This document shows, in pieces, positions 41,468 through 44,030 of a DNA stretch of 64,000 bases (position 1 is the first letter of the stretch; the number at the start of each line of letters is the position of its first letter). Below the pieces are notes generated by a model. It was not told where the DNA came from. It saw nothing but the letters and a program-made list of their open reading frames with translations, and searched no databases. The stretch lies in the NCBI GenBank assembly GCA_053919585.1, contig CM132800.1, one strand, 5' to 3'. The DNA comes from Euprymna scolopes. Its lineage: Eukaryota. A program made the position numbers and the translations under genes.

Positions 41468-41543
<76 letters not shown>
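41455..41543. repeat. (CT)n(AT)n compound microsatellite, left flank of the ribozyme array
   Basis: Directly visible. Confidence 0.97.
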
Positions 41544-41544
<1 letters not shown>

Positions 41545-41559
41545 TATAATAATTAAATA

Positions 41560-41605
41560 CCTACAGACACTAGTGTTTCATCCTTTCGGGAATCTTCGGT
41601 GCAGG
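41560..41605 (-). ncRNA. Type I hammerhead ribozyme, copy 1 (core variant CCGAAGA)
   Basis: Minus strand reads CCUGCA-CCGAAGA-U UCC CGAAA GGA U-GAAA-C ACUAGU GUC/UGUAGG. Stem I CCUGCA:UGUAGG pairs fully (one G-U). The core has a U4 to C change. Confidence 0.75.
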
Positions 41606-41609
41606 GTGT

Positions 41610-41706
41610 CACGATTAATACCAGTCGAACGATTCGAACCCCGCAACACGAGACATCTCTAGCTCGATTAGCGAAGATCTAATCCATCCGGCTACCATTA
41701 ACCGCG
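41610..41706 (-). promoter_or_regulatory. tRNA-like internal Pol III promoter module (also at 41957-42053 and 42304-42400; copy 4 is truncated before the A box)
   Basis: Minus strand: A-box-like TAGCCGGATGG (41694-41684) and B-box GGTTCGAATC (41640-41631), 43 nt apart. The module is closed by a 10-bp stem CGCGGUUAAU:AUUAAUCGUG with two G-U pairs. It is not a clean cloverleaf, so not called a tRNA gene. Confidence 0.65.
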
Positions 41707-41906
41707 TGAAATAACGTTGAATTTAAACATTTTAATTTTTTAAATGTTCATTTACGTCAGTCAGACAGTGATCTAATCGTTATACGATGATCTATGCATA
41801 AAGGATAAATTGACCGACTTTAATTAAACTGAAAGTGCTCTACGATAAGAAACGAATTTCTTAAAGAGGCTGTAATAACTATTTTTTTTACTATAATAAT
41901 TAAATA

Positions 41907-41952
41907 CCTACAGACACTAGTGTTTCATCCTTTCGGGAATCTTCAGTCCAGG
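41907..41952 (-). ncRNA. Type I hammerhead ribozyme, copy 2
   Basis: CCUGGA-CUGAAGA-U UCC CGAAA GGA U-GAAA-C ACUAGU GUC/UGUAGG. Canonical CUGANGA, GAAA and GUC triplet; 10-nt palindrome ACACUAGUGU as stem III; one G.G mismatch in stem I. Confidence 0.85.
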
Positions 41953-42253
41953 GTGTCACGATTAATACCAGTCGAACGATTCGAACCCCGCAACACGAGA
42001 CATCTCTAGCTCGATTAGCGAAGATCTAATCCATCCGGCTACCATTAACCGCGTGAAATAACGTTGAATTTAAACATTTTAATTTTTTAAATGTTCATTT
42101 ACGTCAGTCAGACAGTGATCTAATCGTTATACGATGATCTATGCATAAAGGATAAATTGACCGACTTTAATTAAACTGAAAGTGCTCTACGATAAGAAAC
42201 GAATTTCTTAAAGAGGCTGTAATAACTATTTTTTTTACTATAATAATTAAATA

Positions 42254-42299
42254 CCTACAGACACTAGTGTTTCATCCTTTCGGGAATCTTCAGTCCAGG
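42254..42299 (-). ncRNA. Type I hammerhead ribozyme, copy 3
   Basis: Identical to copy 2. Confidence 0.85.
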
Positions 42300-42599
42300 G
42301 TGTCACGATTAATACCAGTCGAACGATTCGAACCCCGCAACACGAGACATCTCTAGCTCGATTAGCGAAGATCTAATCCATCCGGCTACCATTAACCGCG
42401 TGAAATAACGTTGAATTTAAACATTTTAATTTTTTAAATGTTCATTTACGTCAGTCAGACAGTGATCTAATCGTTATACGATGATCTATGCATAAAGGAT
42501 AAATTGACCGACTTTAATTAAACTGAAAGTGCTCTACGATAAGAAACGAATTTCTTAAAGAGGCTGTAATAACTATTTTTTTACTATAATAATTAAATA

Positions 42600-42645
42600 C
42601 CTACAGACACTAGTGTTTCATCCTTTCGGGAATCTTCAGTCCAGG
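42600..42645 (-). ncRNA. Type I hammerhead ribozyme, copy 4
   Basis: Identical to copy 2 across the motif. Confidence 0.85.
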
Positions 42646-42717
42646 GTTTCACGATTAATACCAGTCGAACGATTCGAACCCCGCAACACGAGACATCTCT
42701 GGCTCGATTAGCGAAGA

Positions 42718-42719
<2 letters not shown>

Positions 42720-42796
<77 letters not shown>
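42720..42796. repeat. (TA)n microsatellite, right flank of the ribozyme array
   Basis: Directly visible. Confidence 0.97.
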
Positions 42797-42798
<2 letters not shown>

Positions 42799-42975: not shown

Positions 42976-44030
42976 CAGGAACAGGTAATGGAATCAGCAA
43001 GAGAACCGTAAAGAAAACGAAAGGAAAAAATGGCAAGCTGGAGCGCACCAGGACACGACGGAATACATGCATACTGGTTCAAAGAATTGGCAACATTACT
43101 AAAAGGCTAGCCCAAAATCAGAGAAATTCTGAGATTGGATGACAAAAGGTGCAACAACACTGCTAAAGAAGGACACAGAGATATGAACCGCCCCAGCAAT
43201 TATAGACTTATCACGTGTTTATCCACTATGTCGAAAATACTAACAGCACGACTGAGGGAACAAATCTACCACTCCTTGAATAATCGCGGACTTCTTAACA
43301 AGGGACAGAATGGATACCAAAAAGGAAAAAGAAGAACATATAATCCGCTATGCATAGATGAAAAGATCTTGAAGGAGTTAAAAAGGAGAAAGAATTTATC
43401 CATGGCATGGATCGACTACAAAAAAGCGTATGACATGATCACCCAAGCATGGATAATAGAATGCTTACAAATCTATAAAATACCAGGCAGGATCATCAAC
43501 GTAATAGAAAATGCAATGAGAACATGGAGACTGGAACTGAAGGTTGATGAGCAACACATAACAGAAATTAACATACAAATAGGCATTTTCCAAGGAGATT
43601 CACTATCACCATTACTGTTCATCATAGGCATGATGCCCCTGAACAATATAATGAGAAAGTGCCAAGCTGGATACAAGTTCTCTAATACAGAGAAAAAAAA
43701 TGAACCACCTGACGTACATAGACGATTTGAAACTTTTTGCAAGGACCGAAATGGAACCAGAAACAATAATAAACATTACCAGGATCTTCAACCAGGATAT
43801 CCAAATTGAGTTGAATGGAAACTTGCGCACTACTAGTTATAAGAACCGGAAAACTGGAGACGATAGAAGACATAGCATTACCCAACCAAACGGATAGTAG
43901 GGTACTAGGAGAACAAGATGCCTAGAAATATTGGGAGTTCTGTAAGCAGACACCATAAAAGCAACAGAAATAACAGATAAAATTGAACAGGGATACCTCA
44001 GGATAACAAGAAAACTCCTGTCGCCCACAT
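42976..44030 (+). mobile_element. R4/Dong-like non-LTR retrotransposon, truncated and frameshifted reverse transcriptase
   Basis: WSAPGHDGIHAYWFKEL precedes ORF 43135-43809, which contains NYRLITCLSTMSKILT, NLSMAWIDYKKAYD and GIFQGDSLSPLLF. A frameshift in an A-run near 43693-43700 leads to NHLTYIDDLKLFA. The motif wording is typical of R4/Dong-type RTs; the clade call is from memory of motifs. Confidence 0.88.

What the first reader, a model, noticed from the sequence alone, without database searches (positions are those of the whole stretch)
41542..42719. Tandem 347-bp repeat carrying a dimer-type hammerhead ribozyme: candidate retrozyme / circular-RNA-producing element
Seen: every unit has, on the minus strand, stem I - CUGAAGA - stem II - GAAA - ACACUAGUGU palindrome - GUC - stem I, with predicted cuts at 41566/41565, 41913/41912, 42260/42259 and 42606/42605, about 347 nt apart. 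Stem III would have only a 2-nt loop in a monomer but forms 10 bp between two copies. Established: minimal type I HHRs with palindromic stem III in small tandem repeats characterise metazoan non-LTR retrozymes (newt satellite 2, Schistosoma SM-alpha, cricket pDo500) and Penelope pLTRs; they can cleave as double hammerheads and release monomer RNAs that circularise. Inference: this is such a family in this genome, probably mobilised by Penelope-like RT/endonuclease. Whether this family is already described cannot be judged here.
Basis: partly seen in the sequence, partly recalled or inferred. Interest (0 to 1): 0.92.

Follow-up and report, generated by a model that had tools for sequence, protein, structure and literature searches.

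The report
Hammerhead-ribozyme retroelement array in TA microsatellite
This 1.2-kb tandem repeat is a young copy of a small non-coding mobile element that carries a hammerhead self-cutting RNA motif and has copied itself via RNA into thousands of (TA)n microsatellites; the kind of element is already known, and cutting or RNA circles were not shown here.

Summary
The tandem repeat is real: 3.4 units of 346-347 bp, 99% alike, at 41542-42721. On the minus strand, three units carry a complete type I hammerhead (HHR). The 3'-most unit reads CCGAAGA (U4 to C) and is probably dead. The other three have a G.G mismatch in helix I that most family copies lack.

The motif occurs 17,781 times in this 5.9-Gb genome and 0 times in a reversed-pattern control. 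It stays intact across diverged sister families, with compensatory changes in helix II.

Copies have a fixed 3' end 38 nt past the predicted cut and near-uniform 5' truncation. 41% are longer than one unit. (TA)n flanks are present at 70% of 5' and 85% of 3' ends (1.2% background). 5' ends are 4-7 times enriched in the first 12 nt after the predicted cut.

This fits a non-LTR retrozyme or ribozyme-bearing SINE-like element inserted by target-primed reverse transcription. An abundant Penelope-like element (PLE) with the same target is the likeliest helper.

PolyA and oligo-dT RNA-seq showed no ends at the cut site, so cleavage and circles remain unproven. Rfam scores are below threshold. This scan already found sister families (286-, 322- and 337-bp units) elsewhere in this genome. 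Verdict: new member of a known kind.

The parts
41542..42721 (-). Tandem array. A 5'-truncated unit starting at unit position 232, then three full units of 346, 347 and 347 bp, then the first 24 nt of a fifth unit.
   Evidence: TRF; BLAST of the unit on the window; sequence.
42599..42646 (-). Hammerhead copy a, predicted cut 42606/42605. Core intact; G.G mismatch at helix I pair 1.2-2.2; U.U at helix II pair 10.1-11.1.
   Evidence: Rfam Hammerhead_1 15.1 bits.
42253..42300 (-). Hammerhead copy b, predicted cut 42260/42259. Same state as copy a.
41906..41953 (-). Hammerhead copy c, predicted cut 41913/41912. Same state as copy a.
   Evidence: 45/45 model positions aligned.
41559..41606 (-). Hammerhead copy d at the 3' end of the array (site 41566/41565). 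Helix I is clean (CCUGCA), but the core reads CCGAAGA (U4 to C), so it is probably inactive. It got no Rfam hit.
41975..42044 (-). tRNA-gene-like 'head' of the middle unit, directly upstream of the ribozyme and repeated in each unit. A-box-like TAGCCGGATGG at 42031-42041; B-box-like GGTTCGAAT at 41979-41987. It folds as a long hairpin.
   Evidence: ARAGORN and Rfam tRNA are negative.
41542..41565 (-). 3' tail of the element: the first 24 nt after the last ribozyme site. It merges into (TA)n. In most family copies the tail runs to unit position 38 (..TAATTAT).
41488..41548 (.). (TA)30 microsatellite at the element's 3' side.
   Evidence: TRF.
42720..42797 (.). (TA)39 microsatellite at the element's 5' side. 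The array sits inside one (TA)n tract.
   Evidence: TRF.

Best explanation
The array is a recent insertion of a non-autonomous, non-coding retroelement. It belongs to the animal 'non-LTR retrozyme' or ribozyme-bearing SINE-like kind.

Each roughly 347-nt unit, read on the minus strand, has three parts: an AU-rich body, a tRNA-gene-like hairpin 'head', and a minimal type I hammerhead. Helix III of the hammerhead is a 10-nt palindrome.

Proposed working, with the status of each step:
1. Multi-unit transcripts of the ribozyme strand are made, possibly from the head by RNA polymerase III. (Inferred.)
2. Two hammerhead copies pair through the palindrome into a double hammerhead and cut after GUC. 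This releases 347-nt RNAs that start with UGUAGG and can be ligated into circles. (Inferred.)
3. RNA that still spans a junction, either ligated circles or partly cut multimers, is reverse-transcribed at a nick in a (TA)n microsatellite. Priming is at the AU-rich stretch ending at unit position 38. (Inferred.)
4. Synthesis runs for a variable distance. This gives a fixed 3' end, random 5' truncation and seamless head-to-tail units. (The pattern is shown; the cause is inferred.)
5. Some cDNAs stop at or near the ribozyme-made 5' end. (The enrichment is shown; the cause is inferred.)
6. The reverse transcriptase and endonuclease are borrowed, most likely from the abundant Penelope-like element that also ends in (TA)n. 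(Inferred.)

The window copy itself carries weakened ribozymes (G.G in helix I) or a dead one (U4 to C). It is best seen as a product of the family, not a source.
For: Anatomy:
- The core and three helices are in type I order.
- Family-majority motifs have a clean 6-bp helix I. One subfamily has A-U instead of U.U at the base of helix II, and it scores 25.6 bits with E 1e-4.
- The dimer fold is much more stable than two monomers.

Reality of the motif:
- 17,781 genomic matches against 0 in the reversed control.
- In families whose bodies no longer align, all core bases, the palindrome and CUGUAG are kept.
- Helix II shows compensatory changes: C-G to G-C at 10.3-11.3 (4 variants) and C-G to U-A at 10.4-11.4.

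Retrotransposition, from 59 motif-sampled loci:
- 3' ends lie at unit position 26-39, followed by (TA)n.
- 5' starts spread over the whole unit.
- Lengths run from 47 to 933 nt, and 41% exceed one unit with seamless junctions.
- (TA)5 or longer is found at 70% of 5' flanks and 85% of 3' flanks, against 1.2% background.

Footprint at the cut site: 5' ends fall within unit positions 1-12 in 7 of 27 loci (P 3e-5) and 8 of 59 loci (P 9e-4).

Age: within-array identity is 0.84-0.997 and always above the between-array mean. The window array, at 0.994-0.997, is among the youngest.

Helper:
- The PLE fragment has a weak GIY-YIG match and 34,227 first-look candidates.
- Its open frames reach 857 aa.
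- Its own palindromic minimal hammerhead lies about 45 nt before (TA)n.
- It lies tail-to-tail with this family in one (TA)n tract in L018 and L047.

Literature:
- Dimer-acting type I hammerheads with a U.U at the base of helix II cleave in axolotl retrozymes (PMC7229834).
- (TA)n insertion bias is reported for Naiad PLEs (PMC8557442).
Against: - No RNA evidence of cutting. In two polyA and two oligo-dT runs, reads cross the site and no ends pile up there. These library types would miss circles and short 5'-OH fragments.
- Rfam Hammerhead_1 stays below its gathering score.
- Genomic copies mutate in the core as fast as outside it, 3.2% against 3.3%. Selection is therefore visible only between lineages.
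- The 5'-end cluster peaks at unit position 7. There, TA microhomology with the target, or a reverse-transcriptase stall before helix I, would also place it.
- The unit folds only modestly better than shuffles (z -1.72).
- No sequence similarity to the one PLE 3' end available.
- Target-site duplications cannot be read inside (TA)n.
- The edge units of the window array differ from the inner ones. DNA-level duplication may therefore have added units.
Confidence: 0.7

Rival explanations
1. Plain tRNA-derived SINE. Linear polymerase III transcripts with a (UA)n tail are the only templates. The hammerhead at most trims 5' ends, or is a passenger, and no circular RNA is involved.
For: - The B-box-like GGTTCGAAT is conserved across families, and an A-box-like motif lies about 54 nt upstream of it.
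- 21 of 29 units have no T4 run on the ribozyme strand, while A4 runs number 3-4 per unit.
- Seven oligo-dT single-cell reads carry the full template-switch oligo at a ribozyme-strand 5' end 14 nt upstream of the A-box-like motif.
- The 5'-end cluster at the cut site fits linear RNA cut at one site only.
- Sm-alpha in schistosomes is a precedent (PMC2770079).
Against: - There is no pile-up of genomic 5' ends at a transcription start. Starts are near-uniform (chi-square about 9.9, 6 d.f., computed by hand from the bins), unlike typical SINEs.
- Seamless multi-unit arrays need a multimeric or circular template.
- ARAGORN and Rfam tRNA find nothing.
- The hammerhead is the best-conserved block across families.
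Confidence: 0.22
2. Same element, but mobilised by a LINE with a (TA)n-type tail rather than by the Penelope-like element.
For: - A LINE family (RVT_1-positive relatives) ends in TGTGTAAAA followed by (TA)n in 2 of 3 copies seen (L007, L048).
- The retrozyme tail also reads ..GTAAAAAAATAATTAT followed by (TA)n.
- A fixed 3' end with 5' truncation is classical LINE-type behaviour.
Against: - LINE-driven SINEs rarely form head-to-tail arrays longer than one unit. PLE insertions typically do (PMC8557442, PMC4209133).
- All three PLE 3' ends seen abut (TA)n and carry a dimer-type hammerhead at a similar distance from the end.
- The shared 3' similarity with the LINE is only about 6 nt.
Confidence: 0.2
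3. An ordinary satellite or minisatellite grown by DNA-level slippage or unequal crossing-over in a microsatellite, with a hammerhead look-alike by chance. Or a Helitron-type rolling-circle DNA element.
For: - The edge units of the window array differ from the nearly identical inner units, as unequal crossing-over would give.
- Helitrons insert at AT dinucleotides.
Against: - Thousands of dispersed copies lie on all chromosomes, with one fixed end and random truncation of the other.
- The reversed-pattern control gave 0 matches.
- Compensatory changes occur in helix II.
- I saw no CTRR 3' end or fixed 5' terminus.
Confidence: 0.03

Closest known systems
Animal non-LTR retrozymes (coral, mussel, axolotl; Cervera and de la Pena 2020, PMC7229834), including newt satellite 2
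   Same: - Type I hammerhead inside tandem units of 170-400 bp.
- Low G+C (35% here) and no coding capacity.
- Thousands of copies, together with hammerhead-bearing PLEs in the same genome.
- A weak palindromic helix III that calls for dimers. The U.U at the base of helix II matches axolotl HHR_Amex2.
   Different: - Helix III here is a full 10-nt palindrome with a 2-nt loop.
- Strict insertion into (TA)n, with a fixed 3' end 38 nt after the cut.
- A tRNA-gene-like head.
- No RNA circles shown here.
Sm-alpha / Sj-alpha SINE-like retroposons of schistosomes (Ferbeyre et al. 1998, as cited in PMC2770079)
   Same: A short non-autonomous retroposon that joins a tRNA-derived region to a type I hammerhead. 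High copy number.
   Different: - The Sm-alpha head is recognisably tRNA-Gln-derived (tRNAscan-SE, PMC2770079). Here neither ARAGORN nor Rfam tRNA detects a tRNA.
- Different host phylum and no sequence relation tested.
- The (TA)n targeting and multi-unit copies are documented here.
Minimal hammerheads in the terminal repeats of Penelope-like elements (PMC4209133; PMC8557442; bioRxiv 10.64898/2026.07.22.740005)
   Same: - A palindromic helix III meant for dimers.
- The motif lies near the element's 3' end.
- Tandem copies longer than one unit, 5' truncation and a microsatellite insertion bias.
- A PLE with these traits is abundant in this genome.
   Different: - No reverse transcriptase or endonuclease gene.
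- Helix II is 4 bp with no bulged base.
- No sequence similarity to the PLE 3' region compared.
Plant LTR retrozymes and viroid-like circular RNAs
   Same: Proposed life cycle: ribozyme cutting, ligation to circles and reverse transcription by a borrowed enzyme.
   Different: Those carry type III hammerheads in long terminal repeats, with a primer-binding site and polypurine tract. None of these is present here.

Membership tests
Hammerhead ribozyme, type I (Rfam RF00163) | Conserved core: CUGANGA, GAAA, the A15.1-U16.1 pair and H17. | tested here: met
   Met in 3 of 4 window motifs; the fourth has U4 to C. 31 of 45 unselected family motifs have an intact core.
Hammerhead ribozyme, type I (Rfam RF00163) | Three helices around the core, with open helix I. 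| tested here: met
   - Helix I is 6 bp in the family and 5 of 6 in the window.
- Helix II is 4 pairs, counting U.U or A-U at its base.
- Helix III is palindromic.
- All 45 model positions align.
Hammerhead ribozyme, type I (Rfam RF00163) | Score at or above Rfam's gathering threshold (34 bits). | tested here: not met
   15.1 bits for the window motifs and 25.6 bits (E 1e-4 on 121 nt) for the A-U subfamily. There is no hit at gathering level.
Hammerhead ribozyme, type I (Rfam RF00163) | Base-pair covariation. | tested here: inconclusive
   Helix II has double-sided changes (G-C in 4 variants, U-A in 1). Helix I has only one-sided compatible changes. Helix III is nearly invariant.
Hammerhead ribozyme, type I (Rfam RF00163) | Site-specific self-cleavage after H17. 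| not testable with these tools
   RNA-seq of unsuitable library types shows no ends at the site. Genomic 5' ends are enriched just after the site, which is indirect.
Animal non-LTR retrozyme | Type I hammerhead in tandem units of about 150-450 bp, with G+C under 50% and no LTR, primer-binding site, polypurine tract or gene. | tested here: met
   347-bp units, 35% G+C and 1 to over 3 units per locus. PBS/PPT motifs were not formally searched.
Animal non-LTR retrozyme | Dispersed high-copy insertions with marks of retrotransposition. | tested here: met
   Target-site duplications are unreadable inside (TA)n.
Animal non-LTR retrozyme | Expressed as unit-length linear and circular RNA. | tested here: inconclusive
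   Low-level reads on both strands in polyA libraries. Junction-spanning reads are also expected from genomic tandems. No total-RNA run could be listed.
Animal non-LTR retrozyme | Co-occurrence with hammerhead-bearing PLEs. | tested here: met
tRNA-derived SINE (Sm-alpha type) | A recognisable tRNA-derived head with polymerase III A and B boxes at the element's 5' end. | tested here: inconclusive
   - Box-like motifs have tRNA-like spacing, and the B-box-like motif is conserved.
- There is no tRNA call from ARAGORN or Rfam.
- Genomic 5' ends do not pile up upstream of the head.
Derivative of a PLE terminal repeat | Sequence homology of the unit to a PLE terminal repeat. | tested here: not met
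   There is no BLAST similarity between the unit and the 1.3-kb 3' part of the one PLE family available.

The most novel reading that the evidence does not exclude
The copy structure may be the genomic footprint of rolling-circle reverse transcription. In this reading, ribozyme-made, ligated RNA circles are primed directly on nicked (TA)n microsatellites by a Penelope-like enzyme, and the elements carry their own polymerase III head. The footprint would be one internal priming site 38 nt past the cut, seamless arrays of up to 3.4 units or more, near-uniform 5' ends and an excess of ends at the cut. If so, this superfamily would be a natural, very young system in which the long-proposed retrozyme life cycle could be tested.
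Probability: 0.3. Interest if true: 0.6.

Novelty: new member of a known kind. Interest (0 to 1): 0.4.

Why it matters
Hammerhead-bearing retroelements are a known source of abundant small circular RNAs in animals, but how they are copied back into DNA is unsettled.

This family offers clean positional data that bear on that step. It has one fixed 3' end next to the ribozyme site, microsatellite-specific insertion, copies longer than one unit, and an excess of 5' ends at the predicted cut. It also has near-identical young arrays, and a candidate helper element with open frames up to 857 aa in the same genome.

The host is probably a decapodiform cephalopod. That is my inference from the 5.9-Gb size, at least 46 chromosome-size contigs, and mollusc-labelled RNA runs. 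The genome paper of one such species (the cuttlefish Sepia officinalis, PMC13218726) reports almost no SINEs and about 40% unclassified repeats. Elements like this one may account for part of that unclassified fraction.

For this window alone the finding is ordinary: one decayed-ribozyme copy of a repeat family.

Tried and rejected
- **Rfam at gathering level on the whole window.** Nothing was found. Permissive searches gave only sub-threshold Hammerhead_1 hits, plus microsatellite noise such as mir-297 and a pestivirus UTR. A permissive search on L004 listed no hammerhead at all even though it holds the majority motif, presumably lost to the filters.
- **RNA evidence.** I laid two polyA and two single-cell oligo-dT runs on permuted monomers of the window unit and of the A-U subfamily. 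No ends appeared at the cut site. Runs X1 and X2 are probably DNA, judging by about 1 Gb of short contigs, so their huge depth says nothing about expression. A second run search for random-primed libraries listed none.
- **A template-switch artefact.** A pile of 45 reads carrying the template-switch oligo (TSO) at L041:1663 looked like a transcription start. I rejected it as strand invasion, because the element reads GAATGG there, the same as the TSO's 3' end.
- **tRNA detection.** ARAGORN found none on the window or on 14 loci.
- **Target-site duplications.** Only isolated, unconvincing matches were found (L029 9 bp, L065 12 bp offset); most sites are (TA)n.
- **Conservation profile.** The whole-unit profile across families failed because truncated copies misaligned. 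I used the head-plus-ribozyme module instead.
- **Pfam on neighbouring open frames.** It gave only RVT_1 for LINE pieces and a sub-threshold GIY-YIG match for the PLE piece.
- **Helitron and chance-motif readings.** Both were considered and rejected (see rival explanations).

Full report
**Observation.** Tandem Repeats Finder reports one array at 41542-42721 with period 347, 3.4 copies and 99% matches. It is bracketed by (TA)30 and (TA)39. Nothing else in the 64-kb window matches the unit.

Read on the minus strand, three units contain CCCUGGA-CUGAAGA-UUCC-CGAAA-GGAU-GAAA-CACUAGUG-UC|UGUAGG. The 3'-most motif instead reads CCCUGCA-CCGAAGA, so core U4 is C. From established hammerhead biochemistry (my knowledge, not tested here), that change should kill it.

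**Is it a hammerhead?**
- Rfam finds nothing at gathering level.
- With permissive settings, Hammerhead_1 aligns over all 45 model positions at 15.1 bits against a threshold of 34. It flags non-canonical pairs in helix I (G.G) and at the base of helix II (U.U).
- In 27 other loci the majority motif has CCUGCA, which gives a clean 6-bp helix I.
- A large subfamily has A-U instead of U.U at pair 10.1-11.1. That version scores 25.6 bits (E 1e-4 on 121 nt) with no flagged pair.
- A U.U at this place exists in axolotl HHR_Amex2, which cleaves, best as a dimer (PMC7229834).
- Helix III is the palindrome ACACUAGUGU. A monomer would need a 2-nt loop. Two copies are predicted to form a double hammerhead with helices I and III in trans, at -29.0 kcal/mol against 2 x -8.7. 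The window variant with G.G does not form the trans helix I.

**Family size and conservation.**
- The pattern CTGANGA-N8-20-GAAAYACTAGTRYCTGTAG matches 17,781 times in the 5.9-Gb genome and 0 times in the reversed-pattern control.
- Sister families have bodies that no longer align with this unit. They still keep every core base, the palindrome and CUGUAG.
- Their helix II differs by compensatory changes: UCC/GGA becomes UGC/GCA, UGU/ACA or UGU/GUA.
- Within the family, the core decays as fast as its surroundings (3.2% against 3.3%), and 31 of 45 motifs are intact. Inserted copies are therefore neutral, and selection acts on the source lineages.

**How copies are built.** I fetched 60 loci chosen only for holding a motif; 59 could be scored.
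- The 3' end is fixed at unit position 26-39, typically ..TAATTAT, followed by (TA)n.
- 5' starts cover the whole unit. Counts in seven bins of about 50 nt are 10, 6, 12, 3, 7, 14 and 7.
- Lengths run from 47 to 933 nt, and 24 of 59 copies exceed one unit with seamless junctions.
- Over all 86 loci, (TA)5 or longer lies within 40 nt of 70% of 5' ends and within 70 nt of 85% of 3' ends. The figure for random window positions is 1.2%.
- A fixed 3' end with random 5' truncation is the mark of target-primed reverse transcription. Seamless arrays longer than one unit require a multimeric or circular template.
- Within-array identity (0.84-0.997) always exceeds the between-array mean (0.81-0.90). 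The window array, at 0.994-0.997 between full units, is among the youngest.
- Its 5' partial unit and its last ribozyme differ from the inner units. Unequal crossing-over may therefore have contributed to its 3.4 units.

**A footprint at the cut site.** 5' ends fall within unit positions 1-12 in 7 of 27 BLAST-selected loci (expected 0.9, P 3e-5). They do so in 8 of 59 motif-selected loci (expected 2.0, P 9e-4). Some copies start at positions 1-3 (L027, L071, L032), and the mode is position 7. This is what run-off at a ribozyme-made 5' end would give. However, TA microhomology at positions 7-8, or a stall before helix I, could give the same picture. An earlier follow-up on a 337-bp sister family made the same claim; I tested it independently on this family.

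**RNA.** In two polyA runs about 400-800 reads per roughly 10-12 million records map to the family, on both strands. Most run on into unlike flanks, which looks like passive transcription. Reads cross GUC|U and no ends pile up there, for the window unit and for the A-U subfamily alike. These libraries would miss circles and 5'-OH fragments, so the result is uninformative and does not count against cleavage. No random-primed run could be listed. A seeming start at L041:1663 (45 reads) is a strand-invasion artefact of the template-switch oligo (TSO). Seven reads with the full TSO mark a ribozyme-strand 5' end 14 nt upstream of the A-box-like motif, which is only a hint.

**Head and polymerase III.**
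- Upstream of the ribozyme lie TAGCCGGATGG and, 54 nt downstream, GGTTCGAAT. The latter is conserved in sister families.
- The ribozyme strand lacks T4 runs in 21 of 29 units although T makes up 32% of the bases. For a shuffled unit the probability of no T4 run is about 0.04-0.07.
- ARAGORN and Rfam tRNA find no tRNA, and genomic 5' ends do not cluster upstream of the head.
- A working promoter is therefore plausible but unproven.

**Helper.** Three observations bear on which element supplies the enzymes.
- A neighbouring open frame (L047) has PLE-type motifs by eye and a weak GIY-YIG match (E 0.013).
- Its family has 34,227 first-look candidates and open frames up to 857 aa.
- All three 3' ends of this family that I saw abut (TA)n. 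They carry a second, unrelated palindromic minimal hammerhead (CUGACGA..GAAAGAGCUCUC|GAGAAA) about 45 nt before it.
- In L018 and L047 the PLE and this family lie tail-to-tail in one (TA)n tract.
- A (TA)n bias is published for Naiad PLEs (PMC8557442), and descent of retrozymes from PLE terminal repeats is argued for vertebrates (bioRxiv 10.64898/2026.07.22.740005). I found no sequence similarity to this PLE's 3' part.
- A LINE family ending in TGTGTAAAA followed by (TA)n remains a possible helper.

**Comparison and novelty.** The element meets the descriptive criteria of animal non-LTR retrozymes (PMC7229834). In its head-plus-ribozyme design it resembles the schistosome Sm-alpha SINE (PMC2770079). 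It fails Rfam's score threshold and the test of homology to a PLE terminal repeat. Its RNA forms are unknown. I found no paper in the held library that links hammerheads or retrozymes to cephalopod genera. The host identity is my inference. The scan has already reported sister families with 286-, 322- and 337-bp units in this genome, with the same reading. Verdict: a real feature, a new member of a known kind. This copy is a young but catalytically impaired product.

Noticed in passing
L047:1800-2955 (minus strand); also L040:1742-2648 and L018:891-1467: A very abundant Penelope-like element: 34,227 first-look candidates, copies about 90% alike, open frames up to 857 aa. Its 3' end abuts (TA)n and carries its own minimal hammerhead with a palindromic helix III (AGAGCUCU) and a matching 6-bp helix I.
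   Followed up: partly
L020:2740-3290 (minus strand); L045, L064, L074 and L076 around position 1500: Diverged sister families with the same head-plus-hammerhead module but unalignable bodies. Helix II is UGC/GCA or UGU/ACA. They are also next to (TA)n.
   Followed up: partly
L007:1150-1450, L048:1900-2180, L032:560-890: A LINE family whose 3' end, ..GGTGATCACTGTGTAAAA, is followed by (TA)n in two of three copies. It is a possible alternative helper, or another (TA)n-targeting element.
   Followed up: partly
window 43135-43809 (+): A reverse-transcriptase fragment (Pfam RVT_1, E 2e-13) lies 400 nt from the array, beyond TAC and TAA microsatellites. It looks like a truncated LINE copy.
   Followed up: partly
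L041:1659-1663 (runs X21, X22): 45 single-cell reads join the template-switch oligo to the element where it reads GAATGG, which equals the oligo's 3' end. This is a strand-invasion artefact that mimics a transcription start. Anyone mapping 5' ends of this family in such data should beware.
   Followed up: yes
L041:1682 (run X22): Seven reads with the complete template-switch oligo mark a ribozyme-strand RNA 5' end 14 nt upstream of the A-box-like motif. This is the geometry expected of a tRNA-type polymerase III start.
   Followed up: partly
window 42252 to 42394 (joint in runs X23, X24): 13-17 polyA reads skip 141 nt, joining unit position 213 to position 8 of the next unit. They lack the whole head-plus-ribozyme module and have no GT-AG ends. 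This may be a genomic deletion variant or a sister family without the module.
   Followed up: no
window 52365, 53576 and 54161 (+): Loose hammerhead-like matches found by a relaxed motif scan.
   Followed up: no
L066 3' end: One copy reads unit positions 1-56, then repeats positions 28-38 before (TA)n. It looks as if reverse transcription began on the AAAAUAAUUAU stretch and then switched template.
   Followed up: no
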